Below are positions 4,375 through 48,904 of a stretch of 64,000 bases of DNA, piece by piece (positions within the stretch are counted from its first letter, which is position 1; every line of letters begins with the position of its first letter). Under the pieces are notes generated by a model, which was given only the letters and a program-made list of their open reading frames with translations, searched no databases and had not been told where the DNA came from. Location: IMG/VR virus record IMGVR_UViG_3300024308_000188, positions 1 through 64,000 of that record. The stretch is one strand, 5' to 3'. The position numbers were made by a program, and so were the translations under genes.

Positions 4375-4638
4375 TTATTGTTTTGTCAGCATCTTAAGAT
4401 CTACAATGTTACCCAACAAAGATTCTTTGACTATCTTAAGTGCATCAATCCTTCCAACAATTTCATGAGCCATCATTTCACTGGCTTGTGTGCCTCGACT
4501 CTTAAGAGCGCGTAATTTTTTATCACTTGCCTTAATCGCATCATTTATAAGTTGCAGTGTTTCAGGAGCTGTTGTAGTTAGTGCAGCTATTTGTTTTGCA
4601 CTAGCTGATTCAGATAGCAAAAGTTGCTTCTTTTTCAT
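4375..4638 (-). CDS. Small helical protein with S-x-S leader (putative head protein)
   Basis: N-terminus MKKKQLLL-SES-ASAK. Confidence 0.6.
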   Translation of the reverse strand: MKKKQLLLSESASAKQIAALTTTAPETLQLINDAIKASDKKLRALKSRGTQASEMMAHEIVGRIDALKIVKESLLGNIVDLKMLTKQ

Positions 4639-5129
4639 AATGATTTATTTCCCTTTATAATGCTCTTTTTAAGAATACCAACAGTTCTTATGTCGTTGTA
4701 TTTTCCTTCAAGTGCATCTATATGAGTGTAGCCAGACTTCAATAACAATTCAGCAAGTTTTGGCTCAGACTGATACCACTCCCAAACTTTTTTATGGCCA
4801 CCATGATTTAATGAATTTAACTCATTGTACAGTGTCAGCGCTTTATCTTTTGATACAAGGTTAAATTTTTTATAGGAATCTATAATACCTTGTTTTATTC
4901 TGGAAATGATTTCACTAAAGGTCACTTGAGCATCAAGTGTACGAAAGCCAAAATTAAATCCTTGACCTAAGTTTATGTCATATTCCATTAAATGTCCGCC
5001 ATATTGCAAAGCATATTTGGCATCTTGTGTGACCCAAATTATATGAGTTCTATTTTGATATTCTTCAGAAAACTTTCCTTCAATACCACGATAGAATTTT
5101 TCACCAGATAAGCTGATTAAAATTTTCAT
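4635..5129 (-). CDS. ADP-ribosyltransferase-like (ART-PolyVal-type) protein with S-x-S leader
   Basis: MKILI-SLS-G leader, then FYRG...IWVTQDAKYALQYG..LMEYDINL and a C-terminal GYTHID. This resembles the Y[HR]G / [FW]xTxD..YA..Y pattern of phage ART-like domains. Confidence 0.5.
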   Translation of the reverse strand: MKILISLSGEKFYRGIEGKFSEEYQNRTHIIWVTQDAKYALQYGGHLMEYDINLGQGFNFGFRTLDAQVTFSEIISRIKQGIIDSYKKFNLVSKDKALTLYNELNSLNHGGHKKVWEWYQSEPKLAELLLKSGYTHIDALEGKYNDIRTVGILKKSIIKGNKSL

Positions 5130-6333: not shown

Positions 6334-8001
6334 TTAATCCTTAGCTACTTTGTTGATTGCTTTTTGAATAGTGCTGTTTGGACGAGCACCAACTTTCTCA
6401 AACCATTCTTTAATTAAGTTTGGATCAATATAGTTTTGAATTGCAGTAGTAGCAGTTACTTTTTCACCGTTAACATGACCTAATTCTTCACCAACTTTTT
6501 TCATGGCCTCAATAAACCATTTATTTATTTCGGCTTCAGATTTACCACGGAAAGCCGGAGCTTTATCAAGAACAGCACCTGCAACAATGGTTCCACGGGC
6601 ATGTCGGAATTTGTGAAGTGTAATGCTTTGATCTACACCTAACGAACGCAAATATTTATTTACGTAAGTACCATTCACATGTTTAACAGCACGACCGAAT
6701 TGAGCAGTCATTATTAAATCATTTGGCTTTTTACCTTCAACCAAACTATCTAATAACCCCTTCATCATTTTGCCTTCAGGCTTATTAGTATGTATTTTAT
6801 GAATTTGTTTAACGCCACTCTTGCCCAAATAATTCAATGTGAAATATCCGGTTCCACGAGAAGTATAGTTTTTACATACCAACGTGCTAATGCCTTGACC
6901 ACTTTGACCAGCAGTACCAATACGAGCAGAGGTTTCGTAAATAAGTTCAAGAATTAAAGCAGATACAGTGTCAGCATCTTCATAATGACCTGTCTTTAAT
7001 TCATGCAACCATTTTTTACGGGCAGCCGGAAGATCTTTTATTAGTGCATCAACAGTGTTAAACTTTTTACCCGCCTTCTCTTTGCGATACTCAACTGTGT
7101 AAATACGTTGAGGCTGCCCAGTACCAAACAGTGGATAGTGAAGGAAAACATAAGTGTTATCCAATTCAGGATCGTACTTAGGATTTGCTTCTAAGCGGCC
7201 TGTTATAGCACCATCAAGTTTTACTTTGTTCGTGTTGTAATAAGCACCGTTTTCATCAACGTAACCATTGAATCCTTCAGGCACTTTGCTACGAATTTTG
7301 TTCTGCTTTAGATAGCGAACTAACTCTGTAGCCTTAACAAGCTTTTCACCACTTTGTCTGACAAAGCTTAATGTTGCTTGCTTTGTCCCTTCGTTAATGT
7401 CCCGCATTAATTTCAGGAAAACTTTATACTGTTCAGGTTTTTTGTCACGTAACGAATTTTTATCTTCGACAGTTAAGTCGGCTTCAGGCTTACCGAAGAT
7501 TTTACGGCAGAATTTATTAAGTTCTGCAACTAAATCTTGTTGGTTACTTTGCTCAGCATCTTCGTGAAGGAAAACAGCTGTTAGATCAGGATCACCAAGT
7601 TTACTAATATGACGAGTAAGATTTTTTAAACTTGCGTCACTCCCACGAAGTACAATACCCATCATATACTTCAAAAGATCAATATGGTCTTTGGTAAGAT
7701 CCAACTCTTTTGTAAGCATACCAGCTTTTTCACGTTCTTTCAGAACACGAATTAAAGCATCAAGATCCCAATCCATATCGGCATTGTCGTTTAAGCAGCC
7801 ATTTACTATAGGATTGAAAGTTGATCTTGGAATACGAAATCTTTTCAAAAATTCTTCGGCGTCTGAATTCCACTTACGGATCTTAGATTTAACTTTAGCG
7901 CCCAAAGGTTCTTCAATCAAACACACCATTATTGAACTGGCTACAAGTTTGATGAATGATTCTGTAGAGTTTTTACTCACAGCAGAAATTGAAATAATCA
8001 T
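6334..8001 (-). CDS. DNA topoisomerase IB with N-terminal extension and S-x-S leader
   Basis: Catalytic pentad in order: ARIG, YLGKSG, HKFRHARGT, LGH, IQNYIDP. N-terminus MII-SIS-A. Confidence 0.88.
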   Translation of the reverse strand: MIISISAVSKNSTESFIKLVASSIMVCLIEEPLGAKVKSKIRKWNSDAEEFLKRFRIPRSTFNPIVNGCLNDNADMDWDLDALIRVLKEREKAGMLTKELDLTKDHIDLLKYMMGIVLRGSDASLKNLTRHISKLGDPDLTAVFLHEDAEQSNQQDLVAELNKFCRKIFGKPEADLTVEDKNSLRDKKPEQYKVFLKLMRDINEGTKQATLSFVRQSGEKLVKATELVRYLKQNKIRSKVPEGFNGYVDENGAYYNTNKVKLDGAITGRLEANPKYDPELDNTYVFLHYPLFGTGQPQRIYTVEYRKEKAGKKFNTVDALIKDLPAARKKWLHELKTGHYEDADTVSALILELIYETSARIGTAGQSGQGISTLVCKNYTSRGTGYFTLNYLGKSGVKQIHKIHTNKPEGKMMKGLLDSLVEGKKPNDLIMTAQFGRAVKHVNGTYVNKYLRSLGVDQSITLHKFRHARGTIVAGAVLDKAPAFRGKSEAEINKWFIEAMKKVGEELGHVNGEKVTATTAIQNYIDPNLIKEWFEKVGARPNSTIQKAINKVAKD

Positions 8002-8009
8002 AAAATTCC

Positions 8010-8786
8010 TTAAGCAAATATAGCTTTAACTTCCGCAGCTATCTTTTCAAGTTCGGGCAATCTATCTGGAGCCACATAACGCTGACTTATATAATCTATA
8101 CTAGGTTTGCCGCCATATAGACTTGAAAATATTACATATTCAGCTATTCCGACTTCATTACCTTGAAAATAATTCGTCACGGCTGTACGCAATTCTTCTG
8201 GAAAATCCCATGTTTCAAAAATCTTAAGAGTAACTGATTTTTCAATTACCTGTAGATTAGATAAATCTAAATCTTTGAACATTGAACGATTAAAAGATTT
8301 TTCCATTTCACATAAAATGGCTAACATCCCTATTCTACTTGTAACCCCTAACAACATAAGAGGTTCAAATATTTTGGTATTCTTTCTAACCTGAGATAGC
8401 GCTATCGCGTATGCTGTAATACGCACACTGTCATCCCAAACACTTTTCAGTATTTTAGATATATAAGGATCAGCCGAAATAAAAAGTTGTTCCATAGCCA
8501 TAGCAACAACCAAAGCTTTTACTTGAGTAAATCCTATGCGAACAACTGCTTGATGTACAGTTTCCACAGGAACTCTTCTATTAAAATGAGCGCTGTTTGC
8601 TAATCGAATAAGTCGCAAAGATAATGCACTATCTCGCATCAACACACTAACAAGCAACTGCGCGTTTACTTCTTGTCTATCCGTAACTTCCATTACTTTA
8701 ATTGCAATATCTGGAAGAGTAGGTAGAGTCATGCTGTTATTATTTATTTTATCGAAGAACATTTGAAGCAGTGCAGTTTCTGGCAT
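8010..8786 (-). CDS. HDOD-domain protein (host-like)
   Basis: LPTLPDIA...DSALSLRLIRLANSAHF...VETVHQAVVRIG...WDFPEEL is the HDOD signature. Confidence 0.88.
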   Translation of the reverse strand: MPETALLQMFFDKINNNSMTLPTLPDIAIKVMEVTDRQEVNAQLLVSVLMRDSALSLRLIRLANSAHFNRRVPVETVHQAVVRIGFTQVKALVVAMAMEQLFISADPYISKILKSVWDDSVRITAYAIALSQVRKNTKIFEPLMLLGVTSRIGMLAILCEMEKSFNRSMFKDLDLSNLQVIEKSVTLKIFETWDFPEELRTAVTNYFQGNEVGIAEYVIFSSLYGGKPSIDYISQRYVAPDRLPELEKIAAEVKAIFA

Positions 8787-11640: not shown

Positions 11641-12189
11641 TTAATCTATCCAAATTTGATCTTTAGGCATTTCTAAGACATTTCCTTTGGAACCATCTTC
11701 GTTCAATACCATGACTCGACATTTCTCGCTGAGCGGCAGAATATAAAGCAAAATACCCTTCTTCTTTTGACCAGCTGGCCCGTATGTAACAGGTAGGTGC
11801 AAGTTATCTTGCTCACGACCACGAACAGCAATACGAATATTCAAAGAATGTACGCCTTCGTAATCTTTAATGATTTCACCTATCCATTTACGTGCGGCCA
11901 ATACTTGTTCATCAGCAACTTTTAAAATACTGCAATTGCCAAAGAACATTAGCAGACCTTGCTTTAAATCTTTCGTATCTAATTGAGTTTCTGGAAGATT
12001 AGGGCCAGCTGAACTCACAAGATAATTCTTTTGTCCCATCTTAGCAAAGTTTGCAGTAGCATTTTTCATTTTATTTGTCCAACTTACTGCATACATATTT
12101 CTGTCAGCACGTTGTACTTTAAGATGCAGAGGCCCGAACGACTGCTCAATACGAATAGCCTTACTGGATAGACTAATTAATATTCTCAT
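11641..12189 (-). CDS. Hypothetical protein with S-x-S leader
   Basis: N-terminus MRILI-SLS-SK. Confidence 0.65.
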   Translation of the reverse strand: MRILISLSSKAIRIEQSFGPLHLKVQRADRNMYAVSWTNKMKNATANFAKMGQKNYLVSSAGPNLPETQLDTKDLKQGLLMFFGNCSILKVADEQVLAARKWIGEIIKDYEGVHSLNIRIAVRGREQDNLHLPVTYGPAGQKKKGILLYILPLSEKCRVMVLNEDGSKGNVLEMPKDQIWID

Positions 12190-12578
12190 TTCTCAACCTT
12201 TTTAATCATTAGAGTAAACACGTACTCGTAAGTTTCGGCATCCGTGGAATCGTCGAAGCCTTGAATAAAAACCATTACCTCAAATACGCTCTCTTTTGGA
12301 AATTTTTCTGAAACAGCATCGAGCGTATTAAATATCTCACCTAAAGGTTTTGGCTTACCTTGTGTAGCAAAAACTGTAGCTGACTTCTTGACAAGTTTTT
12401 CTATTTGTGCATTTTTATTTGGAAGAACAGGCACAAATCTCAGTGCTTTAGATTTTAAACCTTTGAGAACAGAATTGGGTTTAACTTCGTCAAGAAATTT
12501 CACAGCAATAATACTTAAATTTGTTTTGTTTCTTGTCCAATCGGATAGAAACTTATTAGCGTCAAGATCTATTCGCAT
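12186..12578 (-). CDS. Hypothetical protein
   Basis: 130 aa ORF overlapping both neighbours. Confidence 0.6.
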   Translation of the reverse strand: MRIDLDANKFLSDWTRNKTNLSIIAVKFLDEVKPNSVLKGLKSKALRFVPVLPNKNAQIEKLVKKSATVFATQGKPKPLGEIFNTLDAVSEKFPKESVFEVMVFIQGFDDSTDAETYEYVFTLMIKKVEK

Positions 12579-27012: not shown

Positions 27013-27693
27013 TTACTCCTCTGCAACAGACATTATGTGTTTTACTTCGCCAAGATAACGAACAGTATTACACTCAATATCTAAATCAGGTTCCATACTT
27101 TCAATTAAAGCTTCTATTTCGTCACCCCAGTTTTTAGGTGCTACTCTAAAGCCATTGTTTTTCAAATATTGATTGTAAACATTTCGGATTTCATAGTAAT
27201 ACACTATTTCTCCAGGAATCAATTCTTGTGCCTGAAGGAACTTAATACTCTTCATTCCGTCAATATCTAAGGACTTAAGCTTTTTAGTAAGTGCAGCATT
27301 TTCTTCGGGTGCAATAAATTTAGCCTTTACGCTTTTCGGTTCCTTTGGTGGAACAAAAGGTTTATTGTCTAGCAAAGTGTTCGCAGGTTTAGGTTCAGCA
27401 CCACCAAGACTACCAGCAAATACTTTTATCTTGGAGACAGTACCAGTCCAACCAATTGAACGCTTGAGAACAAGTAAGGCAATTTTTTCGCTGAGGCGGA
27501 AAAGGATTTCAGGATATTCTTTGAAGATCAGTTGATAGTTTTCACCAACTTTTCTAACTCCGAATATATCGTTTTCTGAAATGTCGGCTTCAGGATTTGA
27601 CTTAGGTATGTCAACGGATCTTTTACCTTTGAATTTATACCAGTCAAAATCTTTGACACTTCTTTTATTTGTAGCGGAGACTACAATAAGCAT
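27013..27693 (-). CDS. Protein carrying the shared DFxW...DIFGVR domain
   Basis: MLIVV-SAT leader variant. Domain shared with 8836-11631 and 53381-55081. Confidence 0.65.
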   Translation of the reverse strand: MLIVVSATNKRSVKDFDWYKFKGKRSVDIPKSNPEADISENDIFGVRKVGENYQLIFKEYPEILFRLSEKIALLVLKRSIGWTGTVSKIKVFAGSLGGAEPKPANTLLDNKPFVPPKEPKSVKAKFIAPEENAALTKKLKSLDIDGMKSIKFLQAQELIPGEIVYYYEIRNVYNQYLKNNGFRVAPKNWGDEIEALIESMEPDLDIECNTVRYLGEVKHIMSVAEE

Positions 27694-35968: not shown

Positions 35969-37012
35969 TTAAGACAATTGCTTCATAATTGCTCTAAGCT
36001 TTTTATGTCCAGGTTTGCCAATATTGACGTATCTTCTATTCATTCCTGTAGTGTAAGCTAAAATACCTAAGCTTGACATTAAAGTTTTAGCTGCTTTTGC
36101 TTTTGCTTCTTCACCAAAATTTACTTGAATGTTTCCGTGACCATCATCTTTAGCCTTCATAAATAAAGCAAGCGTTTTTTTATTTGCTTCATCTAATTTT
36201 GGTTTTTTAGCCATTTCAGATCTTATAGATTTCAGGTCTTTCAGGTAGTAGTTAAGTTCAATACTGTCACCTAAATGTTTGCTTTTGTTTTCAGGTGAAG
36301 TTAAAACATCGTACATCTTTTGCATTTTAGCTATAGCAGCATCAACAGCAGCTAAAGTTTCTTTTGTTGGAATACCTTCGGACTCAAGTTTTTTGTCCAA
36401 GGCTTTCCATACTTTGATTGCGTCATTAACAGGATCTTTTGTTGGAACATAAAGTTCACTTACTTTAGATACTTTAACCGGAGTATTGTCTCCAATATCA
36501 TGTTTGGTTTCTTTTGTATCAGGCTTACCATTATTAGATTGGCTCTCAGACTTAACAAGAGAAAGTAATTTTCTTCCGCTTAAACGTGGGCCAACATACT
36601 GACGAGTAACCTTACCGCCGTCTTTATGGAAAAGCCACCAACCTGGAGCCATCATTCCAGGAGCACGTTTTTTAACGCCCATCTTTGTAGAGGCTGCATT
36701 ATTTTTTGCACCAGGTGCTTTAGCTGCCGCTTCTGCTTGCAATTCATCTTCAGGTTCAGAGTAAGCTTCTGTACTTACATTGAAATCTTCCGATTTAGAA
36801 ACCATTTTATTGCTAAACATTTTCACATTCATAGATGGTGAAAATTTAGTTTCGTCTTTGAAACGGGCTAAAGCAAAATCGCCTTGTCTTGTTTTGAAAA
36901 CATAACGTCCTGATTCCGCAAAAACTAAACGGCCTTTAGCTTGTTCCAAAACATACTGAACACTGTTCGGCACGGCTGGCTTCTTTGCCGAAACGCTCAA
37001 CGAGATAATCAT
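35969..37012 (-). CDS. Basic putative head protein with S-x-S leader, paralog of the 37045-38745 N-domain
   Basis: MII-SLSVS-AKK, then PNSVQY...GRY...APGA...GWW...RLSGRKLLSL. Confidence 0.7.
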   Translation of the reverse strand: MIISLSVSAKKPAVPNSVQYVLEQAKGRLVFAESGRYVFKTRQGDFALARFKDETKFSPSMNVKMFSNKMVSKSEDFNVSTEAYSEPEDELQAEAAAKAPGAKNNAASTKMGVKKRAPGMMAPGWWLFHKDGGKVTRQYVGPRLSGRKLLSLVKSESQSNNGKPDTKETKHDIGDNTPVKVSKVSELYVPTKDPVNDAIKVWKALDKKLESEGIPTKETLAAVDAAIAKMQKMYDVLTSPENKSKHLGDSIELNYYLKDLKSIRSEMAKKPKLDEANKKTLALFMKAKDDGHGNIQVNFGEEAKAKAAKTLMSSLGILAYTTGMNRRYVNIGKPGHKKLRAIMKQLS

Positions 37013-39689: not shown

Positions 39690-40346
39690 TTAACCAAAAT
39701 TCTTGAAAACCTGAGCAAACACTTTCATGTAATCTTTACGAATGCCGTGTTTGTATATACGAATAAGAATAGGTTCATATAACTCAAGAACTTTATGCAA
39801 TTCGGTTACAGCAGCCGAATACGTAACTTGAGATAAAGAACTTTGACCGCTGTTTGACATATCCAAATAAAACTTAGCGCAAGCGTATAACAGATTAGCT
39901 ATATTTTCGCTTTTAAAGTTTGCGATCATTCTAACACTATCAAGTAACTCTCTGCGAAGTTTTGAAGCTACTTCTATATACTGGGTTTCATTATTCGCTT
40001 GTATTAGTGAAGGATTGGCAATAAGTGAGGTAGAACATTTTGCTATAAATTCTTTAACCCACTCGCTATCTTTACTTTTCCACGGAGAAGTACCGTATAA
40101 AATTCTGCGTTTGAGATTTGAGATTTCAAGATCAAACTTTGCAACCTCTTCCTGAAGATTTCGTTTACGAGTATTAAAGCTTTTATCACTTTCTATTTCG
40201 TTTGCGTCCTGAGTTGTGGCGTTTACCACACGGTCGATTTCACCTAAAGCACGTACTACGGATTGACGCTCAAGGTACAACGCGCAAATTCTTTGAAACT
40301 CTTCATCTTCTTGACTTGATTCTGAAATGAATACACGAATTTTCAT
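39690..40346 (-). CDS. Helical protein with S-x-S leader
   Basis: N-terminus MKIRVFI-SES-SQ. Confidence 0.7.
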   Translation of the reverse strand: MKIRVFISESSQEDEEFQRICALYLERQSVVRALGEIDRVVNATTQDANEIESDKSFNTRKRNLQEEVAKFDLEISNLKRRILYGTSPWKSKDSEWVKEFIAKCSTSLIANPSLIQANNETQYIEVASKLRRELLDSVRMIANFKSENIANLLYACAKFYLDMSNSGQSSLSQVTYSAAVTELHKVLELYEPILIRIYKHGIRKDYMKVFAQVFKNFG

Positions 40347-40374
40347 ATTTGTTCCTTAGTGGAAACCTTATTAG

Positions 40375-40399
40375 AAAGAGCACCCAAAAGAATGCTCTT
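40375..40399 (-). terminator. Intrinsic terminator-like hairpin
   Basis: Minus strand AAGAGCATTC-TTTT-GGGTGCTCTT-T. Confidence 0.65.
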
Positions 40400-40550
40400 G
40401 AAATAAAGTTTAGATAAGAAGTGCCTTCATAATGATCTCCAGTTAAAGTTGATCAAATCACTGACTCTATGCAGCGGAGCGGTTGCTCTACTACCTTCTT
40501 TAACGTGGTGTAGTTACCACGAGATATGGATCACCTCCTTATCCTATGGA
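40400..40550 (-). ncRNA. Candidate structured RNA with a perfect extended Shine-Dalgarno and minigenes
   Basis: TAAGGAGGTGATCCA at 40541-40527, three hairpins, and the GGAG-preceded minigene MKALLI* at 40430-40410. Confidence 0.4.
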
Positions 40551-40554
40551 AAAA

Positions 40555-41775
40555 TTATTTAAGTAAGGGAGCGACAATTTTGCTGATAACAGCTTTACTA
40601 ATTGGTTTACTCATGTCAAAAGTTTCACCAAAACTGGCCTTATACTTAGTCATGTGCATCATCTTACCATTTTTGATTCCGAAACGTGCTTTAACGGTTC
40701 CGCGACGTGGATGATAAAAACTAATGCCACCAGGTGTAGGTATTAAGTCAATACCTTTTGCCTTAAGATCTTTGCCGAATTTATCAACAACATATTGACT
40801 TGCTTCATTGAATTTTCCTGTTGACGCAGGTTTTTCAACAGTATTGGTTTTGATCTTAAGATTCTTGGTAATAGCCTCCAAAACTTCTGCGTTAGTTCCT
40901 TTCACCAGTTTATGGTTAGTAACCTTAGTAGATTTCGGCCCATCCTCTTCGATCATTACAATGCCAGTACCGACATAAATATTTAGTTTATTGTTGCCGC
41001 CTACAGTAATCATATTGATAGGTAAGGAAACAGCAAAGTGATTGTATCTGTGTGCAGGTACATTAGGTGACGGACTAAAGTGCTCACGTACACGAGCTTT
41101 AATAGTCATGCCATCACCGAAAGCTTTTTTCAAGCTACGTGCAATAGAGGCTCCTAATTTCTTCACTGAATCTGCGTCTTTGTACAAAACCATATCCAAC
41201 TCTTTTACAGCATTACCAGTTATTTTTGCTAACTGGTAAACATCAGCATCCGTATCTTTATAAAGTTTCAATTCGATTGCACGATCTAAAACTTCTGACC
41301 AAATATCGTCGGCAGTGACAGGATTTCTCACTGCTTTTTCTGTGGTCTTAGAACGCATAAAATTCCGAACACCCATACCAAGGCCATGATGCGATCTGGC
41401 ATAGGCTTTAGCACGATCTGTTTTATTCAGTTGAGCTAAAGTAGCTATAGCTTCTGGAAATTCTTTTGCCACCAAACGTACAGTTGCATCAGAGAAAAGC
41501 TGTTTCTTTGTTTTTGAATCAGCAGCTGAAGGTTTAACCTTAACTTCACGGGAATCAGCTTTACCAAGCTTAGCAATCTGAGCAAACACACGTTTGATTT
41601 CTGCGCCATTGAATTCTTTCTTTTGCAATTTTTCTGTAATAGTATCAGGTGTTGCTTTGCCAGTAAACTTAACCAGAACTTTATCGTCAACAGACACTTC
41701 AAAACTGGTGCCAACTTGATTTACTACAATATCACGCTTACGCGCTGAGGTTGATGTGAATACACGAATTTTCAT
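40555..41775 (-). CDS. Basic multidomain protein with S-x-S leader
   Basis: MKIRVFT-STS-AR. Internal HHGLGMGVRN...ADDIW segment. Confidence 0.7.
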   Translation of the reverse strand: MKIRVFTSTSARKRDIVVNQVGTSFEVSVDDKVLVKFTGKATPDTITEKLQKKEFNGAEIKRVFAQIAKLGKADSREVKVKPSAADSKTKKQLFSDATVRLVAKEFPEAIATLAQLNKTDRAKAYARSHHGLGMGVRNFMRSKTTEKAVRNPVTADDIWSEVLDRAIELKLYKDTDADVYQLAKITGNAVKELDMVLYKDADSVKKLGASIARSLKKAFGDGMTIKARVREHFSPSPNVPAHRYNHFAVSLPINMITVGGNNKLNIYVGTGIVMIEEDGPKSTKVTNHKLVKGTNAEVLEAITKNLKIKTNTVEKPASTGKFNEASQYVVDKFGKDLKAKGIDLIPTPGGISFYHPRRGTVKARFGIKNGKMMHMTKYKASFGETFDMSKPISKAVISKIVAPLLK

Positions 41776-41802
41776 TTTTGATTTCCTTTAACTAAAATAT
41801 TT

Positions 41803-41849
41803 AATTACTTGAATTCTTTTTAGAGCGACCAATTACTTGAATTCTTTTT
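41803..41849. repeat. 19-bp direct repeat duplicating a gene 3' end
   Basis: aattacttgaattcttttt at 41803-41821 and 41831-41849. Confidence 0.9.
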
Positions 41850-42510
41850 TCACTGGACGACCCTGAGAAGGTCGAGATTTTTGATCCAGCTTTAGTTTGA
41901 CAGTTATATAAACTTCGTCTGTGCCGACAGTGCTTGTCATTTGTGGATAGTCAACAACTTCCATACTAAAACTTCTGACATCATGTGTTTTAGTATTTTT
42001 AGCAACAAGCTTATCAATGCGGTCAGCAAAAGCCAGTTTACATTTAGCTGCAACTTCAAGACCTTTATCTTGAACAATATTCTCTTTCTGACGAGTCATT
42101 TGTTGGATTGCTACATTCCAACCGAAGTCTGCGGTCTTAGATTTTTTAGCAGGTGCTCCAACTGATTTGGCTTTAGCCATTCTTTTTAATGTAGCAATTG
42201 CTTTGGTAGCAGCACCAGAGCTAAAGTGGAGACAATAGCCAGTTTTATCCACAGCAGAAGTTATATGTGCTGGATTGACTCCGAGCAAAGTAGCTAACTC
42301 TTCAACTTTATTTTGAGCAACGTGTGATTTACGTGCAAGTCGGATAGCATAAGCTAATCCATCAATGGTCTTAACAAAAGGTTTAGTTACCTTTAGTTCC
42401 CTGATCAATTTATTATCTGACTCAAACAATAAGGAACCTAATTCAGCAAGTTTTGCTTTAAATGCACGAGTTGTCGAAGCAGATTCAGAAATTAATATAT
42501 TAACCTTCAT
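41833..42510 (-). CDS. Basic protein with S-x-S leader
   Basis: Start at ATG 42510: MKVNILI-SES-AS. Confidence 0.7.
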   Translation of the reverse strand: MKVNILISESASTTRAFKAKLAELGSLLFESDNKLIRELKVTKPFVKTIDGLAYAIRLARKSHVAQNKVEELATLLGVNPAHITSAVDKTGYCLHFSSGAATKAIATLKRMAKAKSVGAPAKKSKTADFGWNVAIQQMTRQKENIVQDKGLEVAAKCKLAFADRIDKLVAKNTKTHDVRSFSMEVVDYPQMTSTVGTDEVYITVKLKLDQKSRPSQGRPVKKEFK

Positions 42511-42518
42511 AGAATTCC

Positions 42519-42851
42519 CTACCAAAGATCGTTGTATGCCCAATACGCAGCTTGCCATTTATCTTTATAAGCTGGCTTACCATTAGACTTTAAGATGCCA
42601 CGAAATCTTTTGCGAAAATTTTCTCTACGTTCAGGATCTTTGTGAGTAGTGAAATCTTCATAGTCAACATGGCCATACTTTATTAGTTTAAAATTATTTC
42701 CTTTACGTGCTAATACCGCACGTTTGTAGCGCTTATCCTTTATTTCAATGGGTTTATCAAAATCAATGAAAGTCATTCCCTTGTATACAAGTTTACCATT
42801 TTCTTTTTGAATACTGTCTACACTTGTACAAAGACTCACAAGAATTTTCAT
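42519..42851 (-). CDS. Tlr6F/DUF5754-like small basic protein with leader variant
   Basis: MKILV-SLC, then KLIKYGHVDYEDFTTHKDPERRENFRKRF...AAYWAYNDLW. Confidence 0.65.
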   Translation of the reverse strand: MKILVSLCTSVDSIQKENGKLVYKGMTFIDFDKPIEIKDKRYKRAVLARKGNNFKLIKYGHVDYEDFTTHKDPERRENFRKRFRGILKSNGKPAYKDKWQAAYWAYNDLW

Positions 42852-42865
42852 AAGCTCACCTAAAG

Positions 42866-42883
42866 AAAAGGGCCGAAGCCCTT
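42866..42883 (-). terminator. Intrinsic terminator with cUUCGg loop
   Basis: Minus strand AAGGGCTTCGGCCCTTTT. Confidence 0.8.
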
Positions 42884-43040
42884 AATTAAACTTCGATTTA
42901 CGCATAAAGGCAAAGGGGCCAGTTTTTTGTTTAAGGCGTGCATGAATCTCAGGAATTTCATCAACTAATTTTTGTTGACGTTTATTGCGCTGATCTTCAG
43001 GAATTTTCTTAGCAAGATTAGCCACCATGAGTTTTTTCAT
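42882..43040 (-). CDS. Small basic protein (52 aa), below the ORF-track cutoff
   Basis: MKKLMVANLAKKIPEDQRNKRQQKLVDEIPEIHARLKQKTGPFAFMRKSKFN*. Fills the gap between 43043 and the terminator. Confidence 0.55.
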   Translation of the reverse strand: MKKLMVANLAKKIPEDQRNKRQQKLVDEIPEIHARLKQKTGPFAFMRKSKFN

Positions 43041-43042
43041 TC

Positions 43043-43645
43043 TTACTCTTCCGCTTGAACTTTACTTAGCTTACTTAAAAGCTGTCTACCAAGCTGATTC
43101 TTAAATTTATCCAACTTACCAGGAGTCTTTAAAACATCCAAAGCTTTCTGGTGAGCAAGCTTTAACTCTTTGTAGTTATCTCGTTCACGCTCAAAAGTAG
43201 CTAAAGCTTTCTTTTTGGCGATAGGATTAGTTGCGTTTTCTGCATCTTTCTTTGCTTTCAACGCTCTATTTTTGTGACTTTCCAGTGAAGCAGTTGTTTC
43301 TTCACTATCAGCATCCAAACCAAACTCTTCCATAGCGCCAGAAAATCTTTTGGCGAAACTTTGCTGCAAATCGTCATCCAGTTTAGATACTTCTTTTAAT
43401 AGATTAGGATCTAAACCTTTAGATGCTTCTGCAAATCTAGGATCTAAGCCGGATGCGAATTGGCCAGTCCTTGATTTACGTTCCTTATGTTTTGCCATAC
43501 GCATATGATGTTTAGCGTACTGACTATTTGGATGTTCTTCAATATATTCTTTTTTAGCTTCGTCTGAAAGTTCATCAAACCAATTGGAGCCTCCAATTTT
43601 TTTAGGTTTGTTATTTGAAGAGCTAATAAATACTTTGATTTTCAT
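43043..43645 (-). CDS. Protein with S-x-S leader and WFxxLS...YIxxHPxS motif
   Basis: MKIKVFI-SSS-N, then NWFDELSDEAKKEYIEEHPNSQYAK. Confidence 0.7.
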   Translation of the reverse strand: MKIKVFISSSNNKPKKIGGSNWFDELSDEAKKEYIEEHPNSQYAKHHMRMAKHKERKSRTGQFASGLDPRFAEASKGLDPNLLKEVSKLDDDLQQSFAKRFSGAMEEFGLDADSEETTASLESHKNRALKAKKDAENATNPIAKKKALATFERERDNYKELKLAHQKALDVLKTPGKLDKFKNQLGRQLLSKLSKVQAEE

Positions 43646-43682
43646 AGGGCCGCCTTAATAGTAGGAATCGAACGCATTAAGT

Positions 43683-44510
43683 TCATACATCAAACTTTTT
43701 CTGTGCAGCAGCTGAAGTAAAGAACCAATTATATCCTTTAAGGACTCTTTTGGTTACAGGATCTTTAGCTGACCACGTAAGAATCTTTGAGCGTTTACCT
43801 GCTAATACAGCAAAAATCGAAGCGGTTTCACCGATCTTTGGTCTGACTGAACGGGCTTCACTTAAAGTTTTTTTCTTTGTTTCTTTACCTTCAATAACAA
43901 CTAAATAACTATAGCCTTGTGCTTTAAGTTCAGCACGTTTCTTAGCGGATTCCGCATCGTGTATAGCATCGTTACGCTTTTTCTGAACTCCAGCTAATTC
44001 TTCACGTTGTTTTTGAAGTTTAGCTATTTGTTCATCTAAGGCTTTTATGCGTTGTTTGTCTTTTGCCTCAGTTTTGTTAAAGAATGCTGTTGTATCTTTA
44101 GAATTTGTAGTAAGTGTTATACTCTGACTTCCAACATCTTCTTTTGTTATTTTGTTTCCGATTAAACTCAAAAGTTTAGCTTTAGTTAATGTTAAAGTTG
44201 ATAAATTGCCGGGATGCTTACGTGTAAGAGAATTGTCACGCTCTGCAACAGCAACTATGGATTTAACTGATCCAGATTTAGTGCTATTCACTTCGGTTAT
44301 ACGATAGTTAGTGGCCGCCTTTGTTATAACAGGAGGCATCTTTTTGTAGCGCTCTATAGTTTCTTTCGGAATAAAGCCAATGCTCGGTCTTGGTGGAGTC
44401 TTTTTAGTTGATACTATTGTATATAAAGTAAAAGTACCGCCAACAACAATTTTCTTTTCTTGGGCAGCAGTTAAATCTGCGCTCTCAGACAACATAACTT
44501 GAATTTTCAT
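43683..44510 (-). CDS. Basic protein with S-x-S leader
   Basis: N-terminus MKIQVML-SES-AD. Confidence 0.7.
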   Translation of the reverse strand: MKIQVMLSESADLTAAQEKKIVVGGTFTLYTIVSTKKTPPRPSIGFIPKETIERYKKMPPVITKAATNYRITEVNSTKSGSVKSIVAVAERDNSLTRKHPGNLSTLTLTKAKLLSLIGNKITKEDVGSQSITLTTNSKDTTAFFNKTEAKDKQRIKALDEQIAKLQKQREELAGVQKKRNDAIHDAESAKKRAELKAQGYSYLVVIEGKETKKKTLSEARSVRPKIGETASIFAVLAGKRSKILTWSAKDPVTKRVLKGYNWFFTSAAAQKKFDV

Positions 44511-44528
44511 AAGATTTTCCTATTGAAT

Positions 44529-44927
44529 TTATTTAAGAGAAGCACTTTTGGTGCCTTTCTTAGATTTAAGAGTAGCCTTTTCGCCGTTCAACAGTTTTGC
44601 CAAAGCAGCCGCAGATAAAGGTTTAATTTCATCTTTTGAATGTTTACCTTCTGGAGCAATCAACACTCTTTTTAATTTTCCGTTGCCAGCTATTTCAACT
44701 TCTTTGATGACAAGAGTATATTTGTTTAGTTGTGGAGTTACTTTGTTATCAGCCTTACGTGTGTAAGCACCTGTAACAACCATAAGAAGTTTCGTTCCTT
44801 TGGTCATAAGTTTTTTGATTTGTGACGAAGTAAATCTGTCGTCAGCCAACTGTCTGAATTTAGAGTCAGATGCTTTAAGTCTGGCCAAAGAGTACGAACT
44901 TTGCGAAACGAATACTTTGATTTTCAT
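44529..44927 (-). CDS. Basic protein with S-x-S leader
   Basis: N-terminus MKIKVFV-SQS-SY. Confidence 0.7.
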   Translation of the reverse strand: MKIKVFVSQSSYSLARLKASDSKFRQLADDRFTSSQIKKLMTKGTKLLMVVTGAYTRKADNKVTPQLNKYTLVIKEVEIAGNGKLKRVLIAPEGKHSKDEIKPLSAAALAKLLNGEKATLKSKKGTKSASLK

Positions 44928-44936
44928 ATGTTTTCC

Positions 44937-45857
44937 TTAAATTTTAATTAAGCGATCACCAGTTGGATTTCCGTTAATTAAAAAGTTGTTATCGAAGTAT
45001 TGTTTTGCAAGTTCCCAACCATCTGTGCAGCTTAAACCACGTTCAGATTTACCGTGAACCATATACTCACACAATGTAGCCCAAGCTTCTTCATACCAAG
45101 GATAAGTATATCCTGCATGATTAAATTGATCTGGATGCAAACGTCTTGCAACCAAAGCTTGTTTGTAACGCTCCATCTGAGATTGACGTACAATGCCATC
45201 ATACATTAAAAAGTGAGCAAGCTCGTGCGTGATAACTTGAGCAAGGAATCCTGAAGTTATTGCACCTGAACGTAAGCCTTGAAGTTGATTGAAGTTCAGA
45301 ACAAGCAACTGACGCGCTTTTATAGAGGCATCGGTTTGACGACTGAAGCAAGTAGGTACTACATCAGATTTACACAGAATAAAATGATTTAAGTTGATCT
45401 TCTTCTTAAATCCTGTGTAATCTAAAGCTTGATTTACGGCCTTACGCTCAATGTCAGCTAATGGGTAGCACCATTCATTTCTTCTGCGTTCAAGATTTTC
45501 CTCAAGAAAACCTATTGCTAATGGATGCGCTTTTTTAATTGCAGGAGGTTGAAGAACAACACGGTAGTTGTAATTCAATGTTGCACTTTCGCTAACAATA
45601 TCCTTAGAGTCAATGGCAACAGGTTTAATGTTGTTTAGTGTAATCCAAACAGAATCGAACAAAGCAGGATCGCCATTAAGCATTAAGCTTTTTTCAACAA
45701 GATCTCGCAAAGTACGTTCATCAACTACAGCAACAGCGCCTTTGTCATCACGAATTTTAATACGTGAATCTAAGTACACATGCCAGAAATGATTACGCTC
45801 TATTTTAAACCATTCACCTAATTGGAATGGAGTATCTGAATTGTATCTGAATTCCAT
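44937..45857 (-). CDS. Zincin-like metallopeptidase
   Basis: VITHELAHFL followed by YEEAWATLCE. Internal IV-SES-A precedes the catalytic region. Confidence 0.7.
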   Translation of the reverse strand: MEFRYNSDTPFQLGEWFKIERNHFWHVYLDSRIKIRDDKGAVAVVDERTLRDLVEKSLMLNGDPALFDSVWITLNNIKPVAIDSKDIVSESATLNYNYRVVLQPPAIKKAHPLAIGFLEENLERRRNEWCYPLADIERKAVNQALDYTGFKKKINLNHFILCKSDVVPTCFSRQTDASIKARQLLVLNFNQLQGLRSGAITSGFLAQVITHELAHFLMYDGIVRQSQMERYKQALVARRLHPDQFNHAGYTYPWYEEAWATLCEYMVHGKSERGLSCTDGWELAKQYFDNNFLINGNPTGDRLIKI

Positions 45858-46651
45858 TAGCGCACCATCATAATGTTTTTAGGATCGTGTTGGTTACTTA
45901 CGTAAGCCGGATTTTCAACTTGGCTGCATTCAAAACCAGTTGAATCGTGACACCAACGGTAAACAATTTGCCCATCTTTCAAGTACGGCTTGCGACCTAA
46001 ACGAGTATGTGAACAAGTTAACATAGTGTCTTGGTGGGTAGTGTGGCCGCAATAACTGCAAGTGTAACTTGTGTAATAAAATCCTACGCTATGCGTATTG
46101 CATTCGTTTGTCAGAATGCGATTACAGATTTCAGGATCACGAGTACGATCATATGCCAACAGCAGAATTAATTTTGCGTGATTGTTACGGAAACCACGAA
46201 GCGGTTTTAAATAAGCATCTAAAATAATGCCACGCGCTTTGGTGTGATCCTGATTATCATGTTCGCGGAAAGTTGGTTTACCTTTGTAAGTTTTGTATGC
46301 TTGCATACCCAACTTAGGTTTGAACTGTAACAACTCACTCAAGCTTGCACTATCGCCATTTGTATTTGGCAGATCTGTGATTAATGCCGGAGTAGGAACC
46401 ATTACATAATCACGAATATCAGGACTTGTGTTGTAAACTTTTGCAGCGGCTGGAAGCCAAGCATTAACATCAAGTACAACACCCTCACAGCCACCAACCA
46501 TTTCTGGTTTAGCTGTGATTGCCATATTGTTTTTTGAAAGTTTGTGCAGATCTATACCGCGACCTTCACCTTCACGAACTGAATAACGGCCAATATCAAA
46601 AGAAGAAGATACAAACTTACCTATATCCGTATTTAACTTAACAGGAACCAT
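45857..46651 (-). CDS. Prohead (maturation) protease with CxxC insertion
   Basis: GKPTFREHD (His), GIILDAY, HSVGF (Ser) and FECSQVENPAY fit the caudoviral/herpes-fold prohead protease pattern. ATG at 46651 after AAGGAG. Confidence 0.75.
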   Translation of the reverse strand: MVPVKLNTDIGKFVSSSFDIGRYSVREGEGRGIDLHKLSKNNMAITAKPEMVGGCEGVVLDVNAWLPAAAKVYNTSPDIRDYVMVPTPALITDLPNTNGDSASLSELLQFKPKLGMQAYKTYKGKPTFREHDNQDHTKARGIILDAYLKPLRGFRNNHAKLILLLAYDRTRDPEICNRILTNECNTHSVGFYYTSYTCSYCGHTTHQDTMLTCSHTRLGRKPYLKDGQIVYRWCHDSTGFECSQVENPAYVSNQHDPKNIMMVR

Positions 46652-46664
46652 TGTGTACTTCTCC

Positions 46665-47210
46665 TTAATCAATGTTTTCAGCAATTTGCTGCTCTAAGCG
46701 TTTTTGCTGAGCAAGCAACAGTGTGGGATTACGTTTAAATTTCTGACCATCAGTAAATATGTAATCAGAAATAAGATCGATGCCTTTATTTTGTTCGATA
46801 AAGTGTTTGCAAATAACGTCAAGATAAGCAAACATTTCTACAAGACTTGCAAGAGGAAATTCTTTACGTATTTCCAACTCAACACGGTTACGCAAACTAT
46901 TGAATAAGTTGTATAACTCGTGTTTGTTATTGTGGCCGCTTAAGCTTGCTTGATAAGCTTGCTGTAAACTTTCTAAATCGCTGGCAAGCTTTCCTTGAGT
47001 AAATTCACTGTTACCCGCAGGAACAACAGCGACTTTCATTTCTTTAAGTGCTTGCTTACCTAAGAAATCTATTTGCTCAACAGCTCTTTTAACATCAAGT
47101 TGTTGATTTGGCGGAAAGCATTGAAGTGCAGCCATATAAACAGGAGTCTGGTAGCCTTTTACAATAGCACTGACACCTGATGTACTTAAAAACAATTTAG
47201 CTTTTTTCAT
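46665..47210 (-). CDS. Helical protein with S-x-S leader
   Basis: N-terminus MKKAKLFL-STS-GV. Confidence 0.65.
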   Translation of the reverse strand: MKKAKLFLSTSGVSAIVKGYQTPVYMAALQCFPPNQQLDVKRAVEQIDFLGKQALKEMKVAVVPAGNSEFTQGKLASDLESLQQAYQASLSGHNNKHELYNLFNSLRNRVELEIRKEFPLASLVEMFAYLDVICKHFIEQNKGIDLISDYIFTDGQKFKRNPTLLLAQQKRLEQQIAENID

Positions 47211-48904
47211 AAAAATTCCTTGTCTATGTTCAATTTAGCCCAAGCATAACATTCATCAAATGTTTGTTTGATTGGCTGAACAAGATAAATTTTTCCGCGT
47301 TTGATAAGTGTGTACGGTTGATCATTTTTAATTGGACGACCTGAACGATATACGCTTTCGTCAAATCCATCCTCTAACACACATATCCATTTACGTGAAA
47401 ATTTTCCGCCGGTTGTTTTGTCAACACAACGAATATTTCCTATAATACGATTTCCAAAGCGTAAGTTATAGCGCCAGCGTTGATCAACAGGAAGTTTGGC
47501 GCATTCTTTATCGCAGCGTAGTGTAAGCTTTTTAGGCTTATCGTCAGAAACTTCAACATAAAGCTGTTCGTAATCTTCATCAGAGTCATCAGAACTATTG
47601 GACACAAGTTCTTCTATTTCTTGACGAGGACTTAAAACAGCGTCAAGTTCGTCATCGGATAAATCACTAAGCTTTGGTTGCCAACCTTCGGCCTTCATTT
47701 CTTCTATAGCAATGTATTCAGAGATCTTACGTGCAATCAAATCTAAATCTTGATCTTGTAACCACACAGCAAAATCAGCTGTTAAGAATTCAACAGGATC
47801 ATCTTCAATTTCTGCATCAGAAGATTTACTTTCCAATTCCTCTGGAGCTTTTTCAGAAGCAGGTTCTTCTTCCTCTAAACTTTTATGTGCATTTTCCAGC
47901 ATACGATCAAGTTCTGAATCGTCATCTTCAAAATCTAGATCGTCTTTTTCTTTAACTGGCTCAGTCTTAACTTCTTCCACTTTAGTTTCAGAAGGAACTG
48001 TCTCTTGTTGATTACTTGTATCAGTGCTTTCCTGCGCTTTGGTTTCAGTAGAGTTCTGTTCAACTTCAGCTGGATTTTCTTGCTCTTGTTGTGGAACAGG
48101 AATATCTTTTTTACGTGAACGTGGAATAGTTGATTTATAATCACGGAAACCAAGATAAGCGGCAGTCAATGCTCCAGCTATAACAGCAGCACCTGAAAAA
48201 ACTGCTACTAACGCACCTAAGCCTAATGCAACTTCAGCAAGACCAAAACCTACATCACGAGCAACTTGTTCACCTTTAGAATCATTCTTGGTACTCATTC
48301 CCTTAGATTTTGCTTTAAGGTAAGAACCTAATTCTTTTTTCTTTGCAGGTGATAATTGATCGCTTATGGCACTAGCAACAGATTTTACTTTATTGCTAAA
48401 TTTGGATGTCTGTTCTGCGATTGTAGATCTGACTTGTGGAAATTTATCGTTTGCTCTGCGATCAATTTCGTCACGAGTTACACGTTCTATAGCAACCGCT
48501 AATTCTTCTGGAGATCTTTTCTTACGTTTTAAAATTGGAGCAACAGCTTTACGTAATCTGCTAAAAATACTTTCCTTCTTTTTAGCAGGATCTACAGGAG
48601 TCAGTGGAGGAACCAAATCAACTTCAGGCTCTGGAACTTCAAGTTCCGCTATATCCTGATCAAGTTCTTCAGGTTCAACGTCAACTGCTTTATTCGCACG
48701 TTCCGCCTTCTTTTTAGCCAGACGTTTTTTCTGCGCTTCTTTTTCACGCAGGTATTTGGCAAGTTGACTTGTTTTGTGTTTTTCCAGATACTTCTTTTGC
48801 TGATTGGTGGATAATTTTTTCCACCAATCAGGCTCTTTAGTTATTTTTCTTGCGGATTCAGATACAAACAATGAATCCACTAGATCAAGTTGTACTTTCT
48901 TCAC
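47207..48904 (-). CDS. Multidomain protein with leader, WWxxLS...YLxxH motif and a hydrophobic (TM-like) segment
   Basis: LFV-SES-AR, DWWKKLSTNQQKKYLEKHKTSQLAK, GFGLAEVALGLGALVAVFSGAAVIAGALTAAYLGF. Confidence 0.7.
   Translation of the reverse strand: MKKVQLDLVDSLFVSESARKITKEPDWWKKLSTNQQKKYLEKHKTSQLAKYLREKEAQKKRLAKKKAERANKAVDVEPEELDQDIAELEVPEPEVDLVPPLTPVDPAKKKESIFSRLRKAVAPILKRKKRSPEELAVAIERVTRDEIDRRANDKFPQVRSTIAEQTSKFSNKVKSVASAISDQLSPAKKKELGSYLKAKSKGMSTKNDSKGEQVARDVGFGLAEVALGLGALVAVFSGAAVIAGALTAAYLGFRDYKSTIPRSRKKDIPVPQQEQENPAEVEQNSTETKAQESTDTSNQQETVPSETKVEEVKTEPVKEKDDLDFEDDDSELDRMLENAHKSLEEEEPASEKAPEELESKSSDAEIEDDPVEFLTADFAVWLQDQDLDLIARKISEYIAIEEMKAEGWQPKLSDLSDDELDAVLSPRQEIEELVSNSSDDSDEDYEQLYVEVSDDKPKKLTLRCDKECAKLPVDQRWRYNLRFGNRIIGNIRCVDKTTGGKFSRKWICVLEDGFDESVYRSGRPIKNDQPYTLIKRGKIYLVQPIKQTFDECYAWAKLNIDKEFL

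What the first reader, a model, noticed from the sequence alone, without database searches (positions are those of the whole stretch)
6334..8001. Topoisomerase IB carrying the leader, predicted to be virion-packaged
Seen: intact TopIB catalytic residues, a long N-terminal extension and an MII-SIS-A leader. Established: poxviruses package TopIB to support early transcription. Inference: this phage may inject TopIB to relax or process the incoming genome, or use it during packaging. The extension may be a linker or docking domain.
Basis: partly seen in the sequence, partly recalled or inferred. Interest (0 to 1): 0.62.

Follow-up and report, generated by a model that had tools for sequence, protein, structure and literature searches.

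The report
Jumbo-phage topoisomerase IB with head-cargo tag
An uncultured jumbo phage encodes a genuine type IB DNA topoisomerase whose first nine residues match a short tag shared by about 16 unrelated proteins encoded around the head genes, so it may be loaded into the capsid and delivered with the DNA as in poxviruses, but no experiment shows this yet.

Summary
Window 6334-8001 (-) is a 555-aa ORF with a good ribosome-binding site. It has a complete type IB topoisomerase core with the Arg-Lys-Arg-His-Tyr pentad. In front of the core lies a folded, family-specific all-alpha domain (residues 10-217), not a linker. Residues 1-9 form a free tail that matches an N-terminal tag.

Twelve ORFs carry this tag clearly and four more carry an offset version. 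They are otherwise unrelated and mostly basic. All lie in the virion-gene part of the genome, most beside the head maturation protease or upstream of the major capsid gene.

The tag is kept in orthologues in two related genomes while the protein bodies diverge. Its flavour changes by lineage: Ser-rich here, Ala-rich in Lu11-like phages. The topoisomerase N-terminus changes with it. In several relatives the gene abuts or sits inside the head operon.

This makes a T4-like capsid-targeting role plausible. Packaging itself remains an inference:
- The only virion proteome of a relative (PaBG, 14 stained bands) does not list the enzyme.
- phiRSL1 and Motura orthologues lack the tag.
- In most relatives the gene travels with thymidylate kinase and repair genes.

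The enzyme family in these phages is already known; the tag and the packaging idea appear to be new. My probability that the enzyme is packaged is about 0.45.

The parts
6334..8001 (-). Whole TopIB ORF, 555 aa plus stop (P0001)
   Evidence: phrog_23460 matched full length, E 7.6e-121
8007..8010 (-). Shine-Dalgarno AGGA, 5 nt before the ATG, overlapping the stop of the upstream HDOD gene
7975..8001 (-). Residues 1-9: the N-terminal tag (leader). Hydrophobic and small residues alternate, followed by Ser/Ala. Predicted unstructured.
   Evidence: leave-one-out score; pLDDT below 50 for residues 1-6; residue-class conservation 0.81-0.95 at positions 3-7 in 21 orthologues
7351..7974 (-). Residues 10-217: family-specific all-alpha N-terminal domain
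   Evidence: pLDDT 88. No PDB fold match; best Z 7.2 for one helical hairpin. In the viral structure library it matches only the PaBG and Motura TopIB.
7096..7350 (-). Residues 218-302: beta-rich TopIB N-terminal (DNA-clamp) domain
   Evidence: variola TopIB aligned from its residue 5, model residues 239-539, Z 19.3
6337..7095 (-). Residues 303-555: catalytic domain with R360, K394, R466, H509 and Y524
45857..46684 (-). Head maturation protease, flanked on both sides by tagged ORFs
   Evidence: phrog_18299, E 6.7e-88; 45% identical to PaBG gp226
39690..44927 (-). Run of seven tagged ORFs downstream of the protease: 39690-40346, 40555-41775, 41833-42510, 42519-42851, 43043-43645, 43683-44510, 44529-44927
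   Evidence: bodies unrelated to each other; no Pfam or PHROG family except DUF5754 in 42519-42851
46665..48904 (-). Two ORFs upstream of the protease with an offset version of the tag: 46665-47210 and 47207-48904
35969..37012 (-). Tagged 347-aa ORF directly upstream of the gp82-like, gp81-like and major capsid genes. It holds the position that virion protein gp83 holds in PaBG.
   Evidence: PaBG Table 1
27013..27693 (-). Tagged ORF with a KMPT-N domain right after the tag
11641..12189 (-). Tagged 182-aa ORF in the same block as TopIB; syntenic in both relatives
4375..5129 (-). Two tagged ORFs downstream of TopIB: 4635-5129 (clear tag) and 4375-4638 (offset version)
53381..55081 (-). 566-aa ORF with a tag-like N-terminus followed by a KMPT-N domain

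Best explanation
The gene encodes an active-looking type IB topoisomerase with three parts. Residues 218-555 are a two-domain TopIB clamp and catalytic core. Residues 10-217 are a conserved, phage-specific helical domain. Residues 1-9 are a free tail.

The tail belongs to a class of N-terminal tags found in this phage on about 16 otherwise unrelated, mostly basic proteins. Their genes surround the head maturation protease and the capsid operon.

The most likely working is like the capsid-targeting sequence of the T4 internal proteins. The tag would bring its carrier into the assembling prohead core, and the protease may or may not then trim it. The cargo would stay in the DNA-filled head and leave with the genome. 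A topoisomerase IB delivered this way needs no ATP. It could relax torsional strain in the entering 300-kb genome, or in the host chromosome, before any phage gene is expressed. This would parallel the poxvirus core enzyme that supports early transcription.

Shown here: the enzyme family, the domain plan, the tag, its statistical and comparative reality, and its link to head genes.

Inferred: recruitment to the prohead, retention, ejection, and the action after entry.
For: - Enzyme identity.
- Tag at true starts with ribosome-binding sites.
- Statistics: the twelve best matrix hits of the whole 214.5-kb record all lie at 4.6-45 kb. The leave-one-out score of TopIB is exceeded by 0 of 3348 other start positions.
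- Independence: the carriers are not paralogues beyond the tag, and 14 of 16 have pI 8.3-10.3.
- Head link: the protease lies in the middle of the cluster. A nine-base motif precedes both sheath genes and the operon that holds a tagged ORF, the gp81-like gene and the capsid gene.
- Transfer to relatives: the window-trained matrix finds the same kind of N-termini next to the protease in two related complete genomes. Orthologues keep the tag while their bodies are only 26-50% identical.
- Conservation: TopIB positions 3-7 are as conserved by residue class as the catalytic domain, although AlphaFold leaves residues 1-6 unstructured.
- Co-variation: in Lu11-like phages the tag is Ala-rich on eight or more neighbouring genes and the TopIB N-terminus is Ala-rich too. 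The Lu11 TopIB scores 13.3 on that lineage's matrix (12 of 3624 null positions reach it) and is negative on the window's matrix. The window's TopIB shows the reverse.
- Position in relatives: in nine loci TopIB directly abuts the gp82, gp81, capsid and sheath genes. In L034 it lies between the protease and the capsid operon, among six tagged genes.
- Virion data: PaBG gp83, next to TopIB and with a tag-like start, is a virion protein.
- A second topoisomerase: the phage has a separate type II topoisomerase in its replication module.
Against: - No virion proteome contains the enzyme. PaBG gp84 is not among the 14 Coomassie bands identified, though that screen sees only abundant proteins.
- In most relatives the gene is translationally coupled to thymidylate kinase and lies with MmcB-like and SprT-like genes. 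In this window it lies near an anti-CBASS Acb1 gene. Such genes are usually made before late genes.
- phiRSL1 and Motura orthologues lack a clear tag and lie among metabolic or replication genes.
- The TopIB tag belongs to the weaker, Ser-rich subclass. The two closest relatives score only 3.0 and 0.1 on the window matrix.
- Several Lu-lineage TopIBs reach only the top 1-2% of null positions.
- The protease could not be tied to a known specificity family, and no common cleavage motif follows the tag.
- No candidate late-promoter motif lies directly upstream; the nearest is 8 kb away.
Confidence: 0.45

Rival explanations
1. The enzyme is an ordinary intracellular DNA-metabolism topoisomerase acting as a swivel in replication, transcription, recombination or repair, and it is not packaged. 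Its conserved N-terminus serves the enzyme itself or an intracellular partner. The likeness to the head-cluster tag is a shared preference for a short strand-like start.
For: - The block SprT-like, MmcB-like, thymidylate kinase, gp86, TopIB is conserved in most of the 35 loci, with overlapping reading frames.
- phiRSL1 and Motura orthologues lack the tag and lie in metabolic or replication contexts.
- The enzyme is absent from the PaBG band list.
- Iyer et al. file it under recombination and topology functions.
- The pairing of an SprT-like protease with TopIB recalls the repair of trapped Top1 complexes by SPRTN (established knowledge; PaBG gp89 is annotated as Spartan-like).
Against: - The phage already has a type II topoisomerase in its replication module.
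- In this phage thymidylate kinase has moved to the replication module, while TopIB stayed with tagged genes in the virion-gene block.
- N-terminal positions 3-7 are strongly conserved without any predicted intramolecular role.
- The N-terminus shifts from Ser-rich to Ala-rich together with the tag of neighbouring genes.
- gp86 in the conserved block, and the SprT-like protein in L023, carry the tag themselves.
Confidence: 0.35
2. The tag brings its carriers to the prohead or to the maturation protease, but TopIB is not delivered to the next host. Either it acts at the packaging vertex to release twist while 300 kb of DNA is pumped in, or the protease degrades it like a scaffold component.
For: The same tag evidence applies as for the main explanation. 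The tagged genes flank the protease. Scaffold-like proteins of T4 are recruited to the core and then destroyed (PMC9958956).
Against: Nothing distinguishes this from delivery with the data at hand. A folded 63-kDa enzyme with a conserved extra domain is an unlikely mere scaffold.
Confidence: 0.12
3. The shared N-terminus is not a protein signal at all. It would be a by-product of translation-initiation preferences (A/U-rich early codons) or of chance.
For: The genome is A+T-rich, about 38% G+C. Lys and Ile codons are common after start codons.
Against: - The twelve best hits are confined to one fifth of the genome, and no other start position reaches the TopIB score.
- The same peptide pattern, with other codons and an Ala-rich flavour, recurs in G+C-richer Lu11-like phages.
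- Orthologues keep the tag while the bodies diverge.
Confidence: 0.05

Closest known systems
Topoisomerase I of jumbo phages PaBG (gp84), Lu11 (gp197), NCTB, phiRSL1 (ORF108) and Motura
   Same: Same family and architecture. Alignment is full length at 29-33% identity, and the same helical N-domain is present. Iyer et al. [quoted passage not shown]
   Different: None of these records or papers mentions an N-terminal tag or virion association. phiRSL1 and Motura lack a clear tag and sit in other gene contexts. In this phage the gene has lost its thymidylate kinase and SprT-like neighbours and gained HDOD and KMPT-N neighbours.
Poxvirus (vaccinia, variola) topoisomerase IB
   Same: Same two-domain clamp and catalytic pentad (Z 19, model residues 239-539 against residues 5-291). 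The poxvirus enzyme is carried in the virion core and supports early transcription (established knowledge), which is the model for the proposed role.
   Different: The poxvirus enzyme has 314 aa, with no helical N-domain and no cleavable or shared tag. Sequence identity is only about 13%. Virion presence of the phage enzyme is untested.
T4 capsid-targeting sequence of the internal proteins and Alt
   Same: A roughly 10-residue N-terminal peptide shared by otherwise unrelated, basic, non-essential head proteins. It directs them into the prohead core, and the cargo is injected with the DNA (PMC9958956).
   Different: There is no sequence likeness to the T4 peptide. The T4 peptide ends in the protease site (Leu or Ile, any residue, Glu). 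Here only about five of sixteen tags have a Glu at the matching place, and TopIB has none. The protease here does not match Pfam Peptidase_S77. The function here is untested.
Ejection proteins of giant phages SPN3US and phiKZ
   Same: Jumbo myophages that load many proteins, some of them enzymes such as the virion RNA polymerase, into the head and process several with the prohead protease (PMC7411985 and PMC10052503, listed).
   Different: They belong to a different phage group, have longer propeptides with a defined cleavage motif, and no topoisomerase is among the reported cargo.
Bacterial and archaeal TopIB (D. radiodurans 2f4q, archaeal 6z01)
   Same: Closest solved sequences to the catalytic core by profile search: E 3.8e-19 and 2.5e-14.
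   Different: They are cellular enzymes without the helical N-domain or the tag.

Membership tests
Type IB topoisomerase (Pfam PF01028) | Score above the curated family threshold | tested here: met
   58.1 bits against 23.7, E 1.1e-15. The Phage_integrase family falls below its own cut-off.
Type IB topoisomerase (Pfam PF01028) | Catalytic pentad Arg, Lys, Arg, His or Asn, Tyr | tested here: met
   R360, K394, R466, H509 and Y524 are invariant in 23 orthologues and align to the catalytic motifs of 6z01 and 2f4q.
Type IB topoisomerase (Pfam PF01028) | Two-domain C-clamp fold: a beta N-domain plus a tyrosine-recombinase-like catalytic domain | tested here: met
   Model pLDDT 87. Human Top1 Z 23.3, D. 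radiodurans Z 19.9, variola Z 19.3 over both domains. Tyrosine recombinases score only Z 12-14.
Type IB topoisomerase (Pfam PF01028) | ATP-independent relaxation of supercoils through a 3'-phosphotyrosyl intermediate | not testable with these tools
   Needs the purified protein.
Virion-packaged TopIB (poxvirus type) | The enzyme is physically present in purified virions | not testable with these tools
   The only related proteome (PaBG, 14 bands) does not list it but is too shallow to decide.
Virion-packaged TopIB (poxvirus type) | Minimal enzyme of about 314 aa with pentamer-specific cleavage | tested here: not met
   555 aa with an extra helical domain of 217 residues. Site specificity was not tested.
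Capsid-targeting N-terminal tag (T4 CTS type) | A short N-terminal peptide shared by otherwise unrelated proteins of one phage | tested here: met
Capsid-targeting N-terminal tag (T4 CTS type) | Carrier genes lie with head assembly genes and the prohead protease | tested here: met
   (L034). The TopIB gene itself lies 24 kb from the capsid gene in this phage but next to it in nine relatives.
Capsid-targeting N-terminal tag (T4 CTS type) | The tag ends in a prohead-protease cleavage site | tested here: inconclusive
   No common motif follows the tag. A Glu at the T4-like place occurs in a minority and not in TopIB. The protease specificity is unknown.
Capsid-targeting N-terminal tag (T4 CTS type) | The tag is sufficient to load a foreign protein into virions | not testable with these tools
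   Needs a reporter fusion in a cultured relative.
PHROG 23460 | Full-length profile match | tested here: met
   E 7.6e-121, residues 2-554 against profile positions 5-563 of 565.

The most novel reading that the evidence does not exclude
PaBG- and Lu11-like jumbo phages would possess a clade-wide N-terminal capsid-loading tag that co-evolves within each lineage. It would load 15-20 diverse cargo proteins into the head. In different members these would include a type IB topoisomerase, SprT-like and KMPT-N proteins and a GNAT-like enzyme. This would be the first phage known to carry a topoisomerase in its virion, a parallel to poxviruses that arose independently.
Probability: 0.4. Interest if true: 0.75.

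Novelty: new variant of a known kind. Interest (0 to 1): 0.55.

Why it matters
If the tag is a loading signal, it gives a simple sequence rule for reading the injected proteome of a whole clade of jumbo phages from genomes alone. It would also give a handle for loading foreign proteins into large capsids.

A topoisomerase delivered with the DNA would be a new kind of first-minute function in phage infection. It would show that poxviruses and phages reached the same solution separately.

If the tag is something else, it is still an unexplained signal shared by many fast-evolving proteins, and worth a bench test in PaBG or Lu11, which are cultured.

Tried and rejected
- DNA search of the phage collection with the gene: no match.
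- Single-sequence search of solved structures: no match; the profile search worked.
- The window-trained tag matrix does not transfer to PaBG, whose tag, if any, is too diverged. PaBG virion proteins other than gp83 show no tag, and the orthologue of the 221-kDa virion protein has none here.
- The N-domain alone gave no convincing fold relative in the PDB.
- The protease has no Pfam hit at E 0.01 or better, gave no Pfam S77 match and no solved relative by sequence. No cleavage rule could therefore be borrowed.
- Looking for the capsid protein maturation site by alignment gave nothing usable.
- Complex prediction of the protease with TopIB residues 1-45 returned no answer, neither support nor evidence against.
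- Papers on Matilda, PaBG, jumbo-phage reviews and polyvalent proteins hold no statement on a virion topoisomerase or on this tag.
- The large protein searches were not used, because family identity was settled without them.
- Considered and rejected: a Sec or lipoprotein signal (the hydrophobic run of 5-7 residues is too short), and common descent of the tagged proteins.

Full report
WHAT IS THERE

The window is the first 64 kb of a 214.5-kb IMG/VR virus record. A 319.5-kb contig with terminal repeats carries the identical gene. Nearly all genes of the window run on the minus strand and encode tail, baseplate and head proteins of a jumbo myophage related to PaBG, Lu11, NCTB and phiRSL1.

The ORF at 6334-8001 (-) has 555 codons. 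It starts at an ATG five bases after an AGGA and lies 9 nt behind an HDOD-domain gene.

THE ENZYME

- Pfam Topoisom_I is matched well above threshold.
- A profile of 23 orthologues finds archaeal, bacterial, kinetoplastid and poxvirus TopIB structures.
- R360, K394, R466, H509 and Y524 are invariant.
- An AlphaFold model built with that alignment has mean pLDDT 87. Residues 230-555 superpose on human Top1 (Z 23), D. radiodurans TopIB (Z 20) and variola TopIB (Z 19, both of its domains). This is well above the tyrosine recombinases.

Membership in the TopIB family is therefore met on every feature that can be tested in silico.

The extension is not a linker. Residues 10-217 fold as a confident all-alpha domain. 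It has no convincing relative among solved structures. In the viral structure library it is found only in the PaBG and Motura enzymes. Residues 1-6 are left unstructured.

THE TAG

Reading the N-termini of all ORFs showed a recurring start. After Met comes a basic or hydrophobic residue, then alternating hydrophobic residues, then a Ser/Ala-rich stretch.

- A matrix built from twelve such starts ranks exactly those twelve at the top of 3360 start-codon positions of the whole record. All lie at 4.6-45 kb.
- Leaving TopIB out of the matrix, its start scores 11.0, and no other start position reaches that score.
- Four further ORFs carry the pattern shifted by a few residues.
- All carriers have a ribosome-binding site.
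- Their bodies share no similarity with each other, and 14 of 16 are basic.
- Most have no Pfam or PHROG family. Two have a KMPT-N domain right after the tag.
- Seven carriers lie in a row just downstream of the head maturation protease at 45857-46684, and two lie just upstream of it.
- One carrier precedes the gp82-like, gp81-like and major capsid genes, in an operon headed by a nine-base motif. That motif also precedes both sheath genes and the portal region, which makes it a candidate late promoter.
- Three carriers flank TopIB itself.

COMPARATIVE EVIDENCE

Thirty-five IMG/VR loci encode orthologues. In nearly all, the match starts at residue 1 and the N-terminus follows the same pattern. 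Positions 3-7 are conserved by residue class at 0.81-0.95. The first nine residues as a whole (mean 0.74) are as conserved by class as the catalytic domain (0.76), although the model gives residues 1-6 no intramolecular role. This suggests a partner acting in trans.

I fetched two complete related genomes. The window-trained matrix finds its best hits there, again beside the protease and around TopIB. Orthologues of the window's tagged proteins keep a tag while the rest of the protein is only 26-50% identical.

In Lu11-like phages the tag is Ala-rich and heads eight or more genes just downstream of TopIB, and the TopIB start is Ala-rich as well. In a swap test, the window's TopIB scores 9.2 on the window matrix and -3.2 on the Lu matrix. 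The Lu11 TopIB scores 13.3 on the Lu matrix and -3.3 on the window matrix. Six of the seven Lu-lineage TopIBs tested score better on their own lineage's matrix (L042 does not), though several reach only the top 1-2% of null positions.

Gene order adds to this. In nine loci TopIB directly abuts the gp82, gp81, capsid and sheath genes. In L034 it lies between the protease and the capsid operon, among six tagged genes. In PaBG the neighbour gp83, which has a tag-like start, is one of 14 virion bands.

EVIDENCE THAT POINTS THE OTHER WAY

- The PaBG band list does not contain the topoisomerase. It covers only proteins visible by Coomassie staining.
- Across most of the clade the gene forms a block with SprT-like, MmcB-like and thymidylate kinase genes, with overlapping frames. 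Here it lies 5 kb from an Acb1 anti-CBASS gene. Such genes are usually needed before heads are built.
- phiRSL1 and Motura enzymes have the helical domain but no clear tag, and sit among NAD, polyamine or replication genes. Packaging, if real, is therefore a trait of the PaBG, Lu11 and window branch only.
- The window's two closest relatives have TopIB starts that fit the window matrix poorly.
- No candidate late-promoter motif lies directly upstream of the gene.
- The specificity of the protease is unknown.

MECHANISM

Shown: a catalytically complete TopIB, a conserved extra domain, and a free N-terminal tail that belongs to a statistically and comparatively real class of tags tied to head genes.

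Inferred, by analogy with the T4 capsid-targeting sequence (PMC9958956) and with injected phage effectors in general (PMC5512222): the tag recruits its carriers to the prohead core, they remain in the filled head, and they leave with the DNA.

For TopIB the plausible pay-off is ATP-independent relaxation of the entering genome or of host DNA before phage gene expression, as for the poxvirus core enzyme. I put this at 0.45. An unpackaged replication or repair enzyme gets 0.35. Recruitment to the prohead without delivery gets 0.12. No peptide signal at all gets 0.05.

COMPARISON AND NOVELTY

The enzyme family in these phages is known and annotated. I found no mention of the tag, its lineage-wise co-variation, its link to the protease and capsid genes, or the idea of a virion topoisomerase in the papers searched.

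The system works like the T4 CTS, but it cannot be filed as a member of that class. The cleavage-site feature is inconclusive, and sufficiency and virion presence are untested. I therefore rate it a new variant of a known kind, of moderate to good interest. PaBG and Lu11 are cultured systems in which it can be tested directly.

Noticed in passing
window 13218-13685 (-): Anti-CBASS protein Acb1 family (PF23474, E 1.4e-27), next to an MmcB-like gene at 12569-13216. Both are syntenic with the TopIB block in the two related genomes.
   Followed up: partly
window 8010-8786 (-): HDOD-domain protein (PF08668, E 8e-34) directly upstream of TopIB with a 9-nt gap, conserved in position in both relatives. 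This domain is unusual for a phage.
   Followed up: partly
window 8836-11631 (-), 27013-27693 (-), 53381-55081 (-): Three proteins carry a KMPT-N domain (PF20294). In two of them it sits right after the tag. The 931-aa protein also gives a weak, sub-threshold hit to the Thoeris inhibitor Tad6.
   Followed up: partly
window 16051, 16856, 30325, 38793 (-) and five further places in the genome: The motif (T)ATAATTTA lies within 120 nt upstream of a gene start in 9 of its 13 occurrences, including both sheath genes, a head operon and the portal region. It is a candidate late promoter. A second motif, CTGTAAAT, precedes replication genes.
   Followed up: partly
window 43043-43645 (-) and 47207-48904 (-): A short conserved motif of about 35 residues directly after the tag is shared by these two proteins (blastp E 0.001) and by two proteins of the 286-kb relative.
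   Followed up: no
L038:9599-11668 (+): In one Lu11-like contig the TopIB frame is open upstream through a GNAT-like ORF of about 130 aa that has its own tag. This is a possible fusion protein with two tags.
   Followed up: no
window 28659-30284 (-) and genome 66688-68382 (-): Two tail sheath paralogues, as in PaBG (gp76 and gp213).
   Followed up: no
genome 75613-79205, 118674-121556, 170250-173201 (outside the window): DNA polymerase I is split into two ORFs. The RecA-like and large terminase ORFs are several hundred residues longer than their PaBG counterparts. These may be inteins or inserted elements.
   Followed up: no
loci L016-L042: An SprT-like (Spartan-like) protease gene is linked to TopIB in most relatives and carries the tag in L023. 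In eukaryotes SPRTN removes trapped Top1-DNA adducts. The window's phage lacks this gene in the block.
   Followed up: partly
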